64,000 bases of DNA from Haliotis rubra. Lineage: Eukaryota. The notes beneath the pieces were generated by a model. That model was not told where the DNA came from. It worked only from the letters and a program-made list of their open reading frames with translations, and did no database searches. Numbering within the stretch: position 1 is the stretch's first letter; the number at the start of each line of letters is the position of its first letter. The stretch is taken from positions 682,001 through 746,000 of the forward strand of contig NW_025765636.1 in the NCBI RefSeq assembly GCF_003918875.1. The letters are read 5' to 3'. Below are positions 23,193-63,287 of the stretch, in pieces. The position numbers and the translations under genes were made by a program.

Positions 23193-24290
23193 GGGGTCGT
23201 TGTCGGTACGAGAACGGGACCGCCTCCGTGGTGTAGTGGTTAGAGCGTCCGCCCGGAGAGCGGAAGGTCGCGGGTTCGATCCCCGACCGCGTCATAGCAA
23301 AAGCCGTTAAAATATGGTACTTGTTGGTCCATGCCTGGCGCTCGGCATTAATGGGTACAACAAGAACTGGTCGGCTCGGAGTCATTATAATGTGTCTGAG
23401 TGGGGTATTCATGCTTCACTGCGGCGTGGTATCTCAGTGGGCTAGCACTATAAAACCAGCCTAAGTCTGGGCTAGTACAAGCAGCCGCACATACAAATAC
23501 ACACGCATGCACGTCGTCATATGAGCGAATTGTTCTCAAGCACGACGTTAAACCAAAATTCACCTCACCTCACATCACCGGTACGGGAACTACAGACGGG
23601 TAACCAAGGTAGCAGAAATCAGAATACAGAAACGTACCCAAGTACGAGTCCATTCCGCATTGAGCCAAGTCAAAACATTGATTACACAACAGTCTCGTTT
23701 CCTGTTGACTGGGTTCCGTCCTATTGCGCAACTTAGTACAATACCAGTCCAGAATTTTGAGACCAGTTCATTTAACTTGATACATAAATATTAATCAGTA
23801 TTATTTGATACATCTAAGCACTTGAATATTGCAACACTACGCTCCTTCTAATCCTTGCAAACAAGTCGTGCAGCGTGCTCTGTCGTACAGCACTGACAAA
23901 CGGAAATCGTGGAAATCTCAAAACGAGGTTTGTGATGTCTATTTTCACTTTGACACGAGGAAATTCGGATCGGCTGAAAATATGTCATTGTCTGAATAGG
24001 TTAATGTTTCATGACTCATGTTTCGGTTTGGTGTTCTTGTTCGGAACTGTCTCATGTATTTAGTTTCGTTATATAAGAAACGAACACACACAGTAACGAT
24101 TATTTCGTGATGCACAATACCACTCGAAATCAGTTGTACGGGAACAACTACATACGGTTTCGGTTTGGGGTTGCGGAACGTTTCTGGGGTTGGGTACGTT
24201 TCTGTATTTTGAGTTTGTTTAGCGTACATTTCTGTATACAGAAACGTATTTGGGGTAGATATCTGTAGTACCTGTGCCGACAACGACCCT
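23193..24290. mobile_element. Non-autonomous DNA transposon, Kolobok-like, hosting a family C SINE
   Basis: TIR GGGTCGTTGTCGG(T/C)AC; flanks TTAA and TTCA; subterminal CAGAAACGTA repeats. Confidence 0.55.
23218..23577 (+). mobile_element. SINE family C (tRNA head plus Meta/MESC-like domain, ~350 bp)
   Basis: A and B boxes; GTCATAGCAAAAG..ATGGTACTTG..GCCTGGCGCTCGGCATTAA core; (CACCT)n tail; imperfect TSD CGGTACG.GAAC. Confidence 0.85.
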
Positions 24291-24402
24291 TTCAGCTTTA
24301 GCAACACACCCAGTAGTTTTGTCTGGCACGGCTTTGCTCCAAGACTCTTCGCAATGATAAGTCCATGTGTGCACCAGTAAGTCTTTTCTTACGTGCCAGT
24401 CT

Positions 24403-24461
24403 GGCACCCCTTGAAGAGCAACCTCCTCGTGGTGGGTGCTGGGTAACGCCAATGGCTCTTC
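24403..24461 (+). ncRNA. HDV-like self-cleaving ribozyme fold at the LINE 5' end
   Basis: P1 GGCACCC/GGGTGCT (G1-U wobble); P2 GAAGAGC/GCTCTTC; P3 ACC/GGT; L3 TCCTCGT; P1.1 CC/GG; minimal P4; J4/2 GCCAA with the C75 equivalent at 24449. Confidence 0.85.
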
Positions 24462-25079
24462 GCCCCCGTGTGGACCCGGGGTCGAATAGGTCCACAGCAC
24501 CCCATTGCTGGTTGTAAGAGGCGACCAAATTGGGCAACCCGTTTGCCGTGGGTTGCACCCCTGTGTCGGCAGAGGAAGGGAGTCTGGTGGTTGAGGATGA
24601 CGGAACCGGCAATAGTGTTCAATAATCCAACACACCACTTTGACCCTAACTTTGCCTAGACGGGTGGTAGAATAGGCCCGATTCTACCAATCGGCTGGTC
24701 ACGCCTTGCCCTGTGCATGGAATGTCTATACAAAACGTGGTATTACATAACACTTTTGACCATGTTCAAAATGTTAACAAATATTCCACCAAAACAAACT
24801 AGCCTCGCAGACCCATGCACAGAAGGCGGTGGCTCATGGGCCAATCTGGTGATGCTGACCTCCGATTTCTGTACGTCTCCAATTGATTGTCATGGACAGA
24901 ACCATCCTGACCTTTAATCTGGTAGGCAGCTACAGCATTTCATGTCAAATTCGCTGGAGTATAACACCCCCCTTATCCCTGGTCTTTGCAGCTTGGAGAC
25001 CCGCTGCAGTATAAGATCGTCCTTGTTGACACTCCACGGTGGGTGGGGAGAGGGGATGCTGAACCACATTACTAACGAC

Positions 25080-26340
25080 ATGGCTTCTCAATACCCCGGT
25101 TCAAAACGAAGACATATGGATGATGACAACTCCTCGTCTGACGAGAGTACGCCCCTCCGACCTGACTACTGGCCACGTTTCCTGATCATTGAGGCTTGTG
25201 ACAAGCAACCTTTGCAATTGAATCCTTTTGCAATCTCCAAAGGTATCGCTGGTATCTGCGGAGAGGTTGCCAATGTTACAAAGCTTAGATCTGGCTCTCT
25301 CCTGATAGAATGTACCCGGAAACACCAATCCTTGAATCTCCTCAAAATAAAAGAATTTGTCAATATCAAGGTCGCTGTCTCAGCACACAAAACCCTTAAC
25401 TCGTGTAGAGGCATTGTACGGGACAGAGCTCGATGCCTGTCTGACATGACTGAAGAACAAATTGTCAAGGAACTCTCTCAGCAATCCGTCACAGCCGTCA
25501 AACGATTCACCTTCAAAAAAGGATGGTGTTGTTCAACCAACGAACACCTATCTCTTCACATTCGCGCGAGCAAACATCCCTGACTCGATTAAAGCTGGTT
25601 ATTGTAGCATTGGTGTGGAGGTGTATGTCCCCAATCCACTCCGGTGCTACAACTGCCAAAAGTTTGGACATGGATCCAAGTCCTGTCGTTCCTCTGCTGT
25701 TTGTTATCGCTGTGGTGACAAGCATGAGGGCAACGACTGTACTAAGGAAGTGAAGTGCACAAACTGCGGTGGTAACCATATGGCCTCCTCCAAGTTCTGT
25801 CCAGTGTGGAAACGCGAATCCGAGATACTAAAGATCAAGCACAAAGAAAATATCTCCTTTCACGAAGCAAAGAAGAGGGTTGCAAGTTTAACTGCAGCCC
25901 CTTCAACCATCACCTACTCTTCTGCTGTCTCCCGTCCTACTATCACTACTGCAACCATCTCATGTCAGACCGACCTGACATGGATCATGTCTTCTCAACC
26001 AACTGAACTCAACACAACTGAGCCCATCTCAGCAACTCCACCTCCAACGCCCAAAGTCAAAACCTCTGAATCACAAACACCAGAGCAAATGCCAAAACCA
26101 GAGACAGAAACTGCGCGCAGAAAAAGGGGAAAAAAAGAGGCTAGAGAGACTAAAGCAACTCGAACAACCGCCAAACACAAAACCAAAGGCCACCTCTCCC
26201 TCAGAGGCCCCCATCGAGGTCCATAACTCCTTTGGCCCTCTGGATATGGAGGTAACTCCATCTCCACCAGACACCAATAGGAGTTCATCAAACGCTTTCT
26301 CACGTTCACGTGACATGTCACCAGTGGAAGCACCATGAAT
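25080..26340 (+). CDS. LINE ORF1 (nucleic-acid chaperone, three CCHC knuckles), split by frameshifts
   Basis: ORFs 24942..25583 and 25462..26226; motifs KLRSGSLLIE, PNPLRCYNCQKFGH, CYRCGDKH, CTNCGGNH. Probable start MASQYP at 25080; shift at the A-run near 25515; 3' end approximate. Confidence 0.85.
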
Positions 26341-29300
26341 CCACAAAACATGATCCAATGGAATTGCAGAGGACTTAAGAATAATTATAATGAATTACAG
26401 TTATTGATTCAAGACTTCAAACCATCTGCGTTTTGTCTCCAAGAAACCTACCTAAAAAGGACCGATAAATTTGACATCCGTCGGTACAGTTCCTACCACT
26501 CCTTTTCTCCTCCCGGTGTAAAAGCTACAGGAGGCACTTCTATCCTGGTGAGGCAGGGCATCCTCCATAGCCCTGTTCCACTTAACACCAACCTACAAAC
26601 TGTTGCTGTCCGCATAACTCTGAACATAGGGTTTACACTATGTTCCCTCTATCTCCCTCCCACCTCAACTGTCCGCCTATCAGATCTTCAGAACTTATAC
26701 GATCAACTCCCAAAGCCCTGCATAATCATGGGCGACTTCAACGGCCATAACCCCCTATGGGGGGAGTAATGATACAAATAGTAAGGGAAAGATCCTTGAA
26801 GAGTTTCTCTCCAATAATGATGTATGCATCTTCAACGATGGATCAAACACCTACCTCCATCCTGCCACTGGATCATACTCTGCTCTCGATCTATCACTTA
26901 CAGATTCTAATCTTTTAAATGAGTTTGAATGGTCGGTCCATGACGACCTTTGTGGAAGCGACCACTTCCCAACAATTCTTACTCCTATCAACCCCACGGA
27001 TGAACCACCATCAACAAGATGGAATTTTACTAAGGCCAATTGGCCTTTATTCCAAACCCTATGTTCAGAAAACTTAAGCCGGACAACTTCAGGAATGTTC
27101 CTGACCCCATGGAACTATTTTCAGACGTCCTAAATGCCATCGGAGACAAAACTATTCCTAAGTCCTCTGCAAACCCGCACATACGCAAACCATGGTTTGA
27201 TACAAACTGCAAACAAGCTAGGAAAAATAGAAAGAAGGCGGAAAAATATTTCCGACAACATCCTACAGTGCATAACCTGAATGCTGTTAAAATGACAAAT
27301 GCCAGGGCAAAACGTACCTTCAAACAAACTAAACGCCGCTCATGGAGGAAATATGTGTCCAAAATCAACTCCCGCACACCCATGTCCAAGGTGTGGAACA
27401 TGATTCAAAAGATCAAGGGCAAAGGGTCAAAATCAGGAGTTCACCACCTGAAAGATGGTGACTCCCTTCTAACAAATAAATCTGAAATTGCAAATAAACT
27501 TGGCGAAACTTTGGCAAACCACTCCTCCTCATCAAATTATAACCCTCTGTTCCAGAAATATCAAACCCAACAAGAAAAGAAACCAGTCAATTTTAACTCT
27601 GATAATGGGGAGGATTACAACGAAACGTTTTCCCTCCATGAATTACGTACTGCCCTAGGACAGGCTCACGACACTGCGGCAGGAGCTGATGAAATCCATT
27701 ATCAGCTTCTGAAACACCTCCCTGACATAGGCTTGGAAACACTCCTAAATATATTTGATGACATCTGGACATCCGGACACTTCCCCCCTTCGTGGCACAA
27801 TGCCATCATCATCCCTATACCAAAACCCGGTCGCGACCATACTGATCCCTCAAACTACCGTCCTATATCACTAACTAGCTGCGTTTGCAAAACCATGGAG
27901 CGCATGGTCAACAATCGATTAATCTGGTACTTGGAGACCAATAACCTCCTCAGTGACCTCCAATGTGGTTTCCGAAAAAACCGAAGTACCATTGACCATC
28001 TGGTGCGTCTGGAATCATTCATCAAAAACTCCATTGTCAACAAACAACATGCAGTATCTATCTTTTTCGACTTAGAAAAAGCATATGATACAACATGGAA
28101 ACATGGTATCCTAAAAGATTTACACGAGTTTGGATTGAGGGGTAGACTACCGCAATTCATATCTCGGTTTCTAAATAACAGACAATTCCAAGTTCGGGTG
28201 GGTTCCACACTGTCTGACTACTTCCACCAAGATCAGGGCGTCCCCCCAAGGCAGCATCCTGTCTGTCACACTTTTTAGCATCAAAATTAACAGCCTCACT
28301 AACGTTCTGAACAGTTGCGTTGATGGGTCGCTTTTCGTCGATGACTTCAATATTTCATGTCGTGGTAAGAACATGCACGCAATAGAAAGGCAGCTACAAC
28401 TCTGCCTTAACAAAATCCAAAAATGGGCCAATGAAAATGGTTTTAGGTTTTCAAAATCCAAAACAAATTGTATTCACTTTTGTCGTAAATACAAACCACA
28501 CAAGGATCCAGACCTAACTTTAGATGGTACTCCCATCAAAGTAGTAGAAGAGGCCAAATTCCTTGGACTCATATTCGACCGCCACCTGACATTCTTACCA
28601 CACATAAAATATTTGAAAACAAAGTGCTTGAAGGCTTTAGACCTGCTAAAAGTAGTTTCAAATACAGAGTGGGGAGGGGATCAGACCACCCTCCTTCACT
28701 TGTACAGATCATTAGTCCGCAGTAAACTAGATTATGGCTCCATTGTCTACGGTGGAGCCTGCAAAAGCAATTTAGAAAAATTAGACTCTATCCACCATCA
28801 AGGACTGAGGCTCTGCCTGGGAGCTTTTAGGACCTCTCCGGTAGACAGTCTATATGCAGAGGCCAATGAACCTTCCCTTGAACAACGCCGCATTAAACTC
28901 TCACTGCAGTATATCGCTAAATTACGTTCAAATGAGCCCAATCCAGCATACAATTGTGTTTTCAACCCGCTCTATGAAAACTTATTTCCTAAACTGCCAA
29001 GCCTGGTTCCACCACTTGGAATCAGGATCAAACCACACATATCTGCAGCTAAAATTGATCTCGACATCATTGCACCATACCGACTTCTGTCCTCACCACC
29101 ATGGCAAATGGTGAAACCACAGGTCGATCTTACCCTCACCAAACTCAAAAAGTCTGAAACAAATCCCTTGGTGTTCCAACAGGAATACAACCAGTTACGT
29201 TCTAAGTATAACACTCACAGATCCATTTTCACAGACGGATCCAAGGACGATGGCCAAGTTGCCAGCGCTACAGTCATTGGAGCCAAGACTGTCTCCTCTA

Positions 29301-30029
29301 GGATCCCCGACAACAGTTCCATTTTCACCGCTGAAGCCAAAGCTATCTTCTCAGCTTTGACCTACATTCAACAGCAAAATCAGTCCAAAAACTTCATCAT
29401 ATTTACAGATTCATTATCCTGCCTTCAAGCACTTCTAAACGTGACTTCAAGTCACCCAATCATCCTGGACATATTAGAACTGTACAACGACCTTTCTACT
29501 AGCCAATATGACATCATCCTCTGCTGGTTGCCGGGTCACGTCGGCATAGCAGGTAACACTAAGGCCGATGCTGCAGCAAAAGCAGCTCTCGAAAAGCCCC
29601 TATCTCCACTGCTAATCCCGTACAGTGACTTCAAACCCACTATCAAAAGCTATACTCGGGACCTGATGCAAAAAAGGTGGGACACTCAAGTAGGAAGAAA
29701 CAAACTCCATGAATTGAAGCCAACAATCGGTTATACCTACTTGGGTTGTCAGTCAAGACGCGATGAGGTAATTTTACGACGATGTCGTATTGGCCACAGT
29801 CGATTTACACATGACTATCTGCTGAAAACGGATGGGGATGGACCCCCCCATGTGTGTCTCTTGCGATGAGGTGTTCACCGTCAAGCATATTCTGCTTGAA
29901 TGCGTGGACTTATCGCCTGCAAGGGACTCACATTATGATGCAACAAACCTAAAAGATCTGTTCTCACGCGTGAGCGCCCATCTGATACTGAACTACCTGA
30001 GGGAAGTTGATCTGTATCATAAACTGTAA
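26335..30029 (+). CDS. LINE ORF2: AP endonuclease, reverse transcriptase, RNase H, C-terminal CCHC (four frameshifts)
   Basis: IQWNCRG, LQET, GDFNGH, SDHFP (APE); YRPISLTSC, QCGFR, FDLEKAYD, GVPQGS, FVDD (RT); IFTDGS, WLPGHVGI (RNase H); CVSC..KHILLEC. Confidence 0.92.
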
Positions 30030-30841
30030 CTGTGAAATGTAACAACCATAAATTGTAACTATGAAATGTAACAAACCGCCTGCCTATAAATTTGATGCTA
30101 TGATTTTTTCTGCTTTCGAATGACAATGCAATAAATAAATGTCTTTGAAATAAAACTCATTCCGAGTATGTACTTACAATATTTACTAATGCAAACTTGT
30201 TCTCGTCACTATATGGCTGGAAAAATGCCGATGTGACGTAAAGCTCAACTCAACTCAACTCAACTAGATAAGCGGACAGTAACCCAGTGTACTATTTATT
30301 ATTTTTTAGAAATTATCATTTAAACTATTAATTTATAAGAGACTTGTGCAAGTCTACGTATTGTAGAACGTGTTATCCTGCTAACGAAGTCTGAAAAACA
30401 TACAACCAGCATTGACATTTTCCTCATGGAAATGAATTTAATAATCTTTTGTGAAAGTATTTCAAGCATCCCCAACAAGTGAGGGGTTAATTGGATTTAG
30501 CCCCCGATAGTCTCAACAGCCATGAACAGGGAACAGTCCTTGGGTGTAGGTTAGAGTCACGTCAAGACGAGCTTGTTCTAACAGAGCGCGATGTTATCCA
30601 GAAAACTGTAGAATTTTATATAGTAACAGACCCTGAAACAAATTATCCAAGAATTCCCATGCAAGTCTAGAATATGTAGCAACTCCAGATTTCCACAGTT
30701 TCTGAAAATGAAGAAAGTCTCTGGGCTCCGTTTCATTATATTTTATGATAATTTAACAGTTTTTTTTCTGTAAATATCTTCATTTCAGAGACTAGATGTT
30801 AGTCTCAATTTTATACATACGTCAGAATAAACCTTTTTAGG

Positions 30842-41707: not shown

Positions 41708-42795
41708 ATGCTTTTATTTTACATACGGGTTTTGAACATGCCCACCAAACGGAGGATAGCCTGGAAACTCGAGCCTGATACAGATCTCTGATTTGTCTGT
41801 GTGGTAGCCTTGCTCCAAGGCTGTACTGAAGGCTAAGCCCATGTATGATTCTATCCATTAAAGAGGCAAGTCTAGATAAGCGGACCTCTAAGGACGCCAG
41901 TATATTAGAGGGATGTTTATAGTTGTTAGAGATTATTATTTAAAACTATTAATTATTACCTTAGAGTCATGTGCAAGTCTAGCTCTGTGGCTGTGTGGCT
42001 GGGTTAGTGTGCCTTGACAAACATTAAGTTCAGGAATAAAGTTATTTCTTTTCGTATTGGCCTACATCACATTTTGCATGGCAGTAAATACGTGAAACCC
42101 ATCTATTTCTCTGCAAATAATTGAGACTGATTATTCTCATCCGCTGACATTCTCTATTCACATGGCTTAATTGGCTGCACCCTTATCCACTCACATCGTC
42201 TCGGAGAAAAACGTCAGGAGTTTTAAATTTCTTCAGAAATTTTAACTTTCTTTTCAAAACACATTTTCCTGAACGTCATTTGAAAAATGTATCTATAGAC
42301 TTCCTTACTCTCTGAAATTCTGTGGAATGAATGGAGTTCCGAAATGAGCACATATTTTCAAAATAACGTACAAAGTGGTGTACCTCTTAAACAGCTCGAA
42401 GTCAAGACTGTCACCGTCATCTCTGGGGGAGGGCCACTATATATGGGGGACGTGGGCCTCTAAATCCGTGACACATGAGTACGTCGCTGTTCGGTGAGGA
42501 ATGTGATGGGGCGATGGGATCGTAAGAATGTAACGTCCTCACAAAATGACAAAGAACCTTATACATTGTTGACCTGTAGTAGAATCACACTTTCTCCACG
42601 CCGTGCTCTGTAACTAAATACACAGGAAGAGGAGTGGAAGTCTTCAGAAGGTATGCTATGTGCGCGAGCTAGATACAGCAGTCTCTCGAACCTCCTCGTT
42701 ATGTTGCTTCTTTGATTTGTCAAATTAAGCCGAAAAATCAAGAAATCACTGTTGGGATTATGCCTAACTGTCTCTTGGTTGCTGTGCAATTATAC

Positions 42796-63148: not shown

Positions 63149-63287
63149 CTTTTAGCAATTTTCCAGCAATATCACGGCAGGGTGACACCAGAAATGGGCT
63201 TCACACATTGTACCCATGTGGGGAATCGAACCCGGGTCTTCTGTGTGACAAACAAATGCTTTAACCACTAGGCTACCCCACCACCCT
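63149..63287 (-). mobile_element. SINE family B, tail truncated
   Basis: Homology to 20288-20459. Confidence 0.8.

What the first reader, a model, noticed from the sequence alone, without database searches (positions are those of the whole stretch)
24403..24461. Minimal HDV-like ribozyme defines the first nucleotide of an I/Nimb-like LINE
Seen: 59 nt fold into the nested double pseudoknot with P1 24403-09/24434-40 (G1-U wobble), P2 24413-19/24455-61, P3 ACC/GGT, L3 UCCUCGU, P1.1 CC/GG and J4/2 GCCAA; P4 is reduced to about G-UAA-C. Removing 24403-30265 gives ..GTGCCAGTCT|AGATAAGCGGAC.., matching the uninterrupted repeat at about 41810-41981, so the element boundary equals the predicted cleavage site. 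Known: HDV-like ribozymes process the 5' ends of R2, RTE and L1Tc/Ingi elements, among others. Inference: this molluscan RNase H LINE is released from read-through transcripts by self-cleavage. I cannot confirm whether this is described for this lineage.
Basis: partly seen in the sequence, partly recalled or inferred. Interest (0 to 1): 0.85.

Follow-up and report, generated by a model that had tools for sequence, protein, structure and literature searches.

The report
P4-less HDV-like ribozyme heading abalone LINE
The first 59 bases of a dead abalone jumping gene (a LINE) fold into a very small self-cutting RNA of the hepatitis-delta type that most likely trims the element's RNA to its exact first base; this is real, but it is a known trick, and a ribozyme of this small type was already reported in abalone in 2011.

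Summary
Window 24403-24461 forms every helix of an HDV-like ribozyme except P4:
- P1 has 7 bp with a G1-U wobble.
- P2 has 7-8 bp and P3 has 3 bp.
- L3 reads UCCUCGU, and P1.1 pairs CC with GG.
- J4/2 reads C-C-A-A, with C24449 as the catalytic cytosine.
- P4 is replaced by a linker of about 5 nt.

A strict descriptor finds this one site in the window and none in 200 simulated windows. Seven related LINE copies from four Haliotis genomes carry the same fold about 590-680 nt upstream of ORF1. They show compensatory changes in P1 and P2, and unrelated DNA begins right before G1. A covariance model built from six of those copies hits the window at 75.7 bits (E 6e-21).

The same 23-nt core occurs in 72 metagenome contigs with strong P1/P2 covariation. 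Many of these are phage theta ribozymes, which have been shown to cleave in vitro.

The element (24403-30265) is a decayed LINE with ORF1 (CCHC), APE, RT and RNase H. A paralogous empty site confirms its ends to within 2 nt.

Cleavage itself and the I/Nimb clade assignment remain untested. The kind is known (R2, RTE, L1Tc), and a P4-less HDV-like ribozyme was reported in Haliotis discus in 2011. This scan has already noted the same ribozyme on at least seven other pieces of this genome.

The parts
24403..24409 (+). P1 5' strand; the predicted cleavage site lies 5' of G24403
   Evidence: Pairs 7/7 with 24434-24440. Across 69 sequences P1 is 97.7% paired, with double changes at all 7 pairs.
24412..24419 (+). 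P2 5' strand (GAAGAGC, plus an optional T24412-G24462 pair)
   Evidence: Pairs with 24455-24461. Compensatory variants occur in L002, L081 and L082.
24421..24433 (+). P3 (ACC/GGT) enclosing L3 (TCCTCGT); C24425 and C24426 form P1.1
   Evidence: Matches the HDV and F. prausnitzii Rfam consensus in this stretch. It does not vary in the seven other Haliotis copies.
24434..24442 (+). P1 3' strand (GGGTGCT) followed by the P1.1 GG
24443..24448 (+). Short linker GTAACG standing in place of P4
   Evidence: The same linker occurs in 72 metagenome contigs, including phage theta ribozymes. Rfam's longer P4 alignment leaves no sequence able to form P2.
24449..24452 (+). J4/2 (CCAA); C24449 is the presumed catalytic cytosine
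   Evidence: C24449 does not vary among copies, while 24450 varies (C, T or G). T at 24450 is the majority in the sequencing-run contigs.
24455..24461 (+). P2 3' strand and the 3' end of the ribozyme
   Evidence: Other copies diverge or carry insertions right after 24461.
24403..30265 (+). Decayed full-length LINE
   Evidence: Empty-site comparison and domains. Several frameshifts are present.
24918..26223 (+). ORF1, in two frames (24918-25580 and 25450-26223), with a CCHC zinc knuckle
   Evidence: It is 62-68% identical to Haliotis proteins.
26314..29866 (+). ORF2 in four frame pieces: APE endonuclease, reverse transcriptase, RNase H
   Evidence: Pfam PF03372, PF14529, PF00078 and PF00075.
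30245..30265 (+). 3' tail, (TCAAC)4 plus T
41860..41890 (+). Uninterrupted paralogue of the insertion site (junction at 41873|41874)

Best explanation
Window 24403-24461 is a P4-less (minimal) HDV-like self-cleaving ribozyme that forms the first 59 nt of the RNA of an abalone LINE encoding APE, RT and RNase H.

Proposed mechanism:
- When the element is transcribed as part of a longer transcript, the nested double pseudoknot folds co-transcriptionally.
- C24449 in J4/2, together with a bound Mg2+, catalyses attack of the 2'-OH of the upstream nucleotide on the phosphate 5' of G24403.
- This frees a LINE RNA that starts exactly at G1 with a 5'-OH.
- Full-length target-primed reverse transcription then copies the ribozyme into each new insertion, so full-length copies begin at G1.

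What is shown: the fold, its conservation by compensatory change, its position at the exact 5' end of eight copies (this one and seven fetched ones), and its identity of core with ribozymes proven active in vitro.

What is inferred: cleavage of this RNA, transcription from upstream promoters, and any extra role in translation. This particular copy is a dead element with frameshifted ORFs, although its ribozyme pairings are all intact.
For: - Fold present and unique in the window.
- Model R1, built from six Haliotis copies without the window, hits 24403-24461 at 75.7 bits (E 6e-21). The next best hit scores 12.6 bits.
- The same fold lies about 590-680 nt upstream of ORF1 in L001, L002, L003, L004, L081, L082 and L084, with unrelated upstream DNA. 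In three H. asinina copies, identity starts exactly at G1.
- Compensatory changes occur in P1 and P2 within Haliotis.
- On 69 distinct sequences the covariation score is 0.47, against 0.135 when shuffled and 0.11 or less when slid. P1 is 97.7% paired.
- Partner-swap control: P1 is 7/7 in 44 of 59 sequences against 3% when partners are swapped. P2 is at least 5 bp in 54 of 59 against 7%.
- In sequencing-run contigs, depth jumps from a few hundred (165-598) to 2.2 million at the ribozyme core. In three species labels, 91-156 contigs per run have unlike AT-rich sequence ending in GGCA.
- P4-less HDV-like ribozymes of this core are Mg2+-dependent self-cleavers in vitro and are dead with the C-to-U change (PMC10879173).
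- HDV-like ribozymes process the 5' ends of R2, L1Tc, baggins and RTE elements (PMC6765202).
Against: - There is no direct evidence of cleavage. All sequencing runs offered were contigs, which cannot show RNA ends.
- One contig of a possibly-RNA run reads through the ribozyme (record 29).
- Rfam scores are below gathering thresholds.
- More distant relatives showed no such ribozyme: Saccostrea L005, ENA L007, H. rubra L008, H. rufescens L083 and JGI L085-L094. It is therefore not universal in the wider LINE group.
- The nested minimum-free-energy fold of the 59 nt is no better than shuffles (z -0.52). This is expected for a pseudoknot, but it gives no support.
Confidence: 0.87

Rival explanations
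1. The conserved 59-nt head is mainly a DNA-level internal promoter, like the 'LINE promoter' head proposed for LP-SINEs or Pr77 of L1Tc. On this view the ribozyme-like fold is secondary or inactive.
For: Matetovici et al. 2016 describe a LINE-derived head of about 70 bp in Haliotis, Littorina and oyster SINEs. It is also found at the 5' ends of Nimb-17_LMi, I-3_DR and RTE-9_CPB, and they read it as a promoter (PMC4758252). The first 77 nt of L1Tc have both promoter and ribozyme activity (same paper; PMC3383444 abstract).
Against: Compensatory double changes in P1 and P2 preserve RNA pairing, not DNA sequence. The same core works as a ribozyme in phages, which share no promoter context with LINEs. 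A dual role is not excluded. I could not establish that the LP head is this ribozyme rather than the module after it (24463 onward). The oyster homology starts at 24463.
Confidence: 0.07
2. The fold is a structural 5' element that does not cleave, for example a binding site for the LINE proteins or a translation-initiation structure.
For: In R2 the ribozyme region also binds R2 protein and has been proposed to act like an IRES (PMC6765202). This copy and some others carry small defects, such as the 6-nt insertion in the P1 5' strand of L082.
Against: The catalytic C, the G1-U wobble, the L3 sequence and P1.1 are all kept. These features matter for catalysis rather than for a generic scaffold. 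The element's 5' end coincides with the cleavage site.
Confidence: 0.04
3. The match is a chance resemblance in a GC-rich 5' UTR.
For: A loose structure-only descriptor matches about 10 loci in the window. Rfam hits are below threshold.
Against: There were no strict-descriptor hits in 200 simulated windows. The fold is conserved with covariation in four species. The model hit has E 6e-21.
Confidence: 0.01

Closest known systems
P4-less HDV-like ribozyme of Haliotis discus (Webb and Luptak 2011, RNA Biol 8:719, as cited in PMC3774820)
   Same: The host is an abalone, the fold is HDV-like, and P4 is replaced by about 5 nt. It is very probably the same family, given the thousands of copies in abalone contigs.
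   Different: I could not read the 2011 paper. Sequence identity, and whether its LINE context and exact 5'-end position were described, remain unverified.
Minimal HDV-like ribozymes (drz-Mtgn) and phage theta ribozymes (PMC10879173)
   Same: The core CCUCCUCGUGG-N8-GGGUAACGCYAA is identical, there is no P4, and the size is 53-61 nt. P1 and P2 are free to covary. Members are shown active in vitro.
   Different: Theta ribozymes sit next to tRNAs in phage genomes. This one heads a eukaryotic LINE with no tRNA beside it. That paper reported nearly all minimal examples as phage-borne.
5'-terminal HDV-like ribozymes of non-LTR retrotransposons (R2, RTE, baggins, L1Tc/ingi)
   Same: The ribozyme is in the sense orientation at the exact 5' end of the element, upstream of the ORFs. 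Copies have conserved downstream and variable upstream sequence (PMC6765202).
   Different: The LINE lineage differs (APE-RT-RNase H with a CCHC ORF1, in molluscs), insertion is not site-specific, and P4 is absent. Bombyx R2 also lacks P4 but has a long J1/2 (PMC3774820).
LP-SINE 'LINE promoter' heads of molluscs (PMC4758252)
   Same: These are short LINE-5'-UTR-derived heads found in Haliotis and oysters and tied to Nimb-clade LINEs.
   Different: They were interpreted as promoters, and no sequences were available to me. The head may correspond to the module after the ribozyme (24463 onward) rather than to the ribozyme.

Membership tests
HDV-like self-cleaving ribozyme | Nested double pseudoknot with P1, P1.1, P2 and P3 in the canonical order | tested here: met
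   All helices are present. Covariation supports P1, P2 and the outer pair of P3.
HDV-like self-cleaving ribozyme | Catalytic cytosine at the first position of J4/2 (C-N-R-A) | tested here: met
   C24449 is kept in all eight Haliotis copies, while the next base varies among C, U and G.
HDV-like self-cleaving ribozyme | G1-U wobble closing P1 at the cleavage site | tested here: met
   G24403-U24440 in the window. G-U is found in 55 of 69 aligned sequences.
HDV-like self-cleaving ribozyme | Mg2+-dependent self-scission giving 5'-OH and 2',3'-cyclic phosphate ends, abolished by the C-to-U change | not testable with these tools
   This has been shown only for phage relatives with the same core (PMC10879173).
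HDV-like self-cleaving ribozyme | Match to the curated Rfam models at gathering score | tested here: not met
   RF00094 scores 29 bits against a cutoff of 50. RF02682 scores 26.4 against 44. These models expect P4 and omit P2, so the failure reflects the missing P4.
Theta ribozyme (tRNA-associated minimal HDV-like ribozyme of phages) | P4 absent and total length about 55-60 nt | tested here: met
   The ribozyme is 59 nt with a 6-nt linker.
Theta ribozyme (tRNA-associated minimal HDV-like ribozyme of phages) | Located in a phage genome with the cleavage site next to a tRNA | tested here: not met
   It lies in a eukaryotic LINE. The only Rfam tRNA hit in the window is at 63218-63276, far away. 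So it works like a theta ribozyme but is not one.
Ribozyme-terminated non-LTR retrotransposon | Ribozyme cleavage site coincides with the first nucleotide of full-length copies | tested here: met
   Empty site, to within 2 nt. Eight copies have unrelated upstream DNA. Loose ends are seen in 91-156 contigs per run.
Ribozyme-terminated non-LTR retrotransposon | Element RNA is made as a co-transcript with upstream sequence and released by cleavage | not testable with these tools
   Only contigs were available and no RNA ends could be read.
I/Nimb group of LINEs | ORF2 domain order APE-RT-RNase H, and ORF1 with CCHC knuckles | tested here: met
   Pfam hits.
I/Nimb group of LINEs | RT groups with I or Nimb reference elements in a phylogeny | not tested
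   No reference LINE sequences (Repbase) were available. The clade remains 'RNase H-bearing I-group, unresolved'.

The most novel reading that the evidence does not exclude
The P4-less ribozyme, together with the conserved module that follows it, may be a portable 5' processing cassette exchanged among unrelated LINE clades and headless SINEs. On this reading the 'LINE promoter' heads of mollusc LP-SINEs and of Nimb-17_LMi, I-3_DR and RTE-9_CPB are ribozyme-linked processing signals rather than promoters. The near-identical 23-nt core in phage theta ribozymes and metazoan LINEs would then reflect shared descent or transfer rather than convergence.
Probability: 0.15. Interest if true: 0.6.

Novelty: new member of a known kind. 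Interest (0 to 1): 0.3.

Why it matters
It explains why full-length copies of this abundant abalone LINE family all begin at the same base. It suggests that the family depends on read-through transcription plus self-cleavage rather than only on its own promoter.

It also shows that minimal, P4-less HDV-like ribozymes are not confined to phages. A 2024 survey found them almost only there, yet abalone genomes hold a very large number of copies (depth in run contigs rises about 10,000-fold at the ribozyme core). This gives a eukaryotic context for that ribozyme subclass.

The gain is incremental. The mechanism is established for other LINEs, and the abalone ribozyme type was reported in 2011.

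Tried and rejected
- Rfam at gathering score found nothing. In the permissive scan, the HDV and F. prausnitzii models placed a long P4 in 24447-24484. I rejected that alignment because the sequence it leaves at the 3' end cannot pair with 24410-24419 to form P2.
- A loose structure-only descriptor was too permissive to mean anything.
- The nested minimum-free-energy fold was uninformative.
- There is no second copy of the LINE or its ribozyme in the window.
- The sequencing runs gave contigs only, so RNA 5' ends, strand and expression could not be read. The one 'RNA?' run is a guess, and its contig reads through the site.
- The 10-20-fold excess of depth over the ribozyme core relative to ORF1 could mean SINE-like derivatives. 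It is equally explained by conserved islands recruiting contigs from diverged LINE subfamilies at 80% likeness. I do not claim SINE derivatives.
- MAFFT misaligned the P1 5' strands where J1/2 length varies, so I used a covariance-model alignment instead. That alignment was fitted to P1 and P3 and leans towards them. P2 was not in the model.
- Distant relatives showed no canonical ribozyme (oyster L005, ENA L007, H. rubra L008, H. rufescens L083). Descriptor hits just before ORF1 in the JGI copies L085-L094 look spurious.
- Gigantopelta L006 has a candidate with a 6-bp P4, but it starts with C-G rather than G-U and is a single copy.
- Clade assignment by RT tree was not possible without reference elements.
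- Webb and Luptak 2011 and Ruminski 2011 are not held. The supplements of PMC4758252 are not held either.
- The orientation of the host gene around the insertion was not resolved.

Full report
**What is there.**
One search shows that window 24403-24461 reads GGCACCC CTT GAAGAGC A ACC TCCTCGT GGT GGGTGCT GG GTAACG CCAA TG GCTCTTC. This gives the following elements:
- P1 has 7 bp (24403-09 with 24434-40), closed by the G24403-U24440 wobble.
- P2 has 7 perfect bp (24413-19 with 24455-61), plus a possible T24412-G24462 pair.
- P3 has 3 bp (ACC/GGT).
- L3 reads UCCUCGU. HDV itself has UCCUCGC there; that comparison is from my own knowledge. The Rfam HDV consensus line reads CCUCCuCGcUGG.
- P1.1 pairs C24425 and C24426 with G24441 and G24442.
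- J4/2 reads C24449-C-A-A.
- Only six bases (GTAACG) lie where P4 would be.

**Is it more than chance?**
- Rfam gives nothing at gathering score.
- In a permissive 171-nt scan it gives RF00094 at 29 bits and RF02682 at 26 bits.
- Those models lack P2 and expect P4. They stretch a P4 over 24447-24484, which leaves a 3' tail that cannot form P2. The drz-agam-1 model aligns the minimal form.
- A loose structural descriptor matches about ten loci in the window and means little.
- A strict descriptor (G1-U, 7-bp P1, NCC in L3, CC/GG for P1.1, CNRA, P2 of at least 6 bp) matches only 24403. It matches nothing in 200 simulated windows.

**The element.**
- 24403-30265 holds ORF1 with a CCHC knuckle, an APE endonuclease, a reverse transcriptase and an RNase H.
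- The ORFs are split over several frames, so this copy is dead.
- It ends in (TCAAC)4 plus T.
- Its flanks align to an uninterrupted paralogue whose junction AGTCT|AGATAAGCGGAC lies at 41873|41874.
- A CT is shared by 24401-02 and 30264-65, so the empty site fixes the 5' end only to 24401-24403.
- There is no second copy in the window.

**Other copies.**
- ORF1 finds 195 relatives (E at most 1e-5). The closest are in Haliotis, so the genome is an abalone. Further relatives occur in oysters and Gigantopelta.
- I fetched DNA around seven Haliotis ORF1 genes: L001 and L084 (H. cracherodii), L002, L003 and L081 (H. asinina), L004 (H. rufescens) and L082 (H. rubra).
- Each has the same ribozyme about 590-680 nt upstream of the ORF1 start.
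- The ten bases before G1 differ in all of them.
- In three H. asinina copies, identity begins exactly at G1.
- Pairing is kept by double changes:
  - P1 GGCACCC/GGGTGCT becomes GGCACTC/GAGTGCT.
  - P2 GAAGAGC/GCTCTTC becomes GGCGAGC/GCTCGCC or GAAGGGC/GCCCTTC.
- The base after the catalytic C varies (C, U or G), as the CNRA rule allows.
- L082 has a 6-nt insertion in the P1 5' strand and is probably a defective copy.
- Model R1, built from six of these copies without the window, hits 24403-24461 at 75.7 bits (E 6e-21). The next hit scores 12.6 bits.

**Abundance and 5' ends in sequencing runs.**
- Only assembled contigs were on offer. No RNA ends could be read.
- When laid at 80% likeness, summed contig depth rises from a few hundred (165-598) in 24308-24388 to 2.2 million at 24416-24442 in run X1. 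Runs of two other species labels show similar jumps.
- In each run, 91-156 contigs have unlike, AT-rich sequence ending in GGCA just before 24408. Many copies therefore start at this G.
- T at 24450 is the majority base, giving J4/2 CUAA.
- Copies diverge right after 24461, the end of P2.
- The core is 10-20 times deeper than ORF1 in X1. This may reflect non-autonomous derivatives, or simply conserved islands shared by diverged subfamilies. I cannot separate the two.

**A wider class.**
- The pattern CCTCCTCGTGG-N8-GGGTARCGCYAA leaves both P1 strands and both P2 strands free. It matched 72 metagenome contigs.
- Among 59 unique sequences, 44 have a perfect 7-bp P1, against 3% when partners are swapped.
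- 54 have a P2 of at least 5 bp, against 7% when swapped. There are 47 different P1 3' strands.
- On a model-guided alignment of 69 distinct sequences:
  - P1 is 97.7% paired, with double changes at all seven pairs.
  - P2 shows double changes at all seven pairs even in a fixed register.
  - The covariation score is 0.47, against 0.135 when shuffled and at most 0.11 when slid.
  - That alignment was fitted to P1 and P3, so it leans towards them. P2 was not in the model.
- Many of these contigs are phage tRNA arrays. They are theta ribozymes: P4-less, about 56 nt, Mg2+-dependent in vitro and dead with the C-to-U change (PMC10879173).
- Another set (L015, L056, L064, L073) heads a different LINE, which has an APE ORF. 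It has the same P4-less core but a J1/2 of about 90 nt.

**Limits of distribution.**
- No such ribozyme was found upstream of more distant ORF1 relatives. These are oyster L005, ENA L007, H. rubra L008, H. rufescens L083 and JGI L085-L094.
- The oyster 5' UTR is homologous to the window only from 24463 on, just after the ribozyme.
- Gigantopelta L006 has a candidate with a 6-bp P4, P1.1 CA/UG and an 8-bp P2. It starts with a C-G pair and is a single copy.

**How it most likely works.**
- The ribozyme folds as the element is transcribed within a longer RNA and cuts 5' of G24403.
- The freed RNA is reverse-transcribed to its end, which copies the ribozyme into the new insertion.
- This is the mechanism established for R2 and L1Tc and proposed for RTE and baggins (PMC6765202).
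- The fold, its conservation and its terminal position are shown here. Cleavage and the source of transcription are inferred.

**What is known.**
[quoted passage not shown] I could not read that paper.
- PMC4758252 describes LINE-derived heads of about 70 bp in Haliotis and oyster SINEs, shared with the 5' ends of Nimb-clade and RTE LINEs, and reads them as promoters. Whether that head is this ribozyme or the next module is open.
- No paper in the searchable library links HDV-like ribozymes with Nimb elements.
- The scan's own notes list the same ribozyme on at least seven other pieces of this genome.

**Verdict.**
This is a real and well-supported minimal HDV-like ribozyme at the exact 5' end of an RNase H-bearing LINE. 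It is a further member of a known kind, in a host where the ribozyme type was already reported. Interest is modest.

Noticed in passing
window 24463-24600; L005:2475-2612; L006:2620-2700: The 5' UTR after the ribozyme is modular. A block around 24537-24600 (AACCCGTTTGCCGTGGGTTGC...CTGGTGGTTGAGG) is conserved in all Haliotis copies, in an oyster (Saccostrea) LINE and in Gigantopelta. The block 24463-24535 is present only in some copies and in the oyster. No Rfam family matches either block.
   Followed up: partly
L019 (PEAW01051765.1), whole 1340 nt: A contig of unknown origin carries a tandem repeat of about 670 nt. Each unit contains a copy of the abalone-type ribozyme with a shortened P1. 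This could be a tandemly arrayed ribozyme-bearing element.
   Followed up: partly
L073:50-230, L064, L015, L056: A different LINE family from metagenomes has an APE ORF 720 nt downstream in L073. It uses the same P4-less core, but its P1 5' strand lies about 117 nt upstream (a J1/2 of about 90 nt). P1 covaries between copies. This resembles the Bombyx R2 layout described in PMC3774820.
   Followed up: partly
L018, L026, L034, L036, L039, L047, L050, L051, L062, L079 (WLWD/WLWI contigs): A repeated, eukaryote-like element has the same ribozyme core with P1 CCCGGGCA/TGCCTGGG. Many copies are cut short at the 5' side by (TG)n runs, and no tRNA lies nearby.
   Followed up: no
L006:2516-2588 (Gigantopelta aegis): A candidate HDV-like ribozyme lies 485 nt upstream of a related ORF1. 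It has a normal 6-bp P4 hairpin, P1.1 changed to CA/UG and an 8-bp P2. Its first pair is C-G instead of G-U.
   Followed up: partly
window 63218-63276 (- strand): This is the only Rfam hit at gathering score in the window: a partial tRNA-like sequence (31.8 bits, model positions 7-64). It is possibly a tRNA-derived SINE head.
   Followed up: no
window 24200-24307: The DNA just upstream of the insertion site is itself a very high-copy repeat (depth up to 1.2 million in X1), ending near 24296. The 24308-24388 stretch is low-copy.
   Followed up: no
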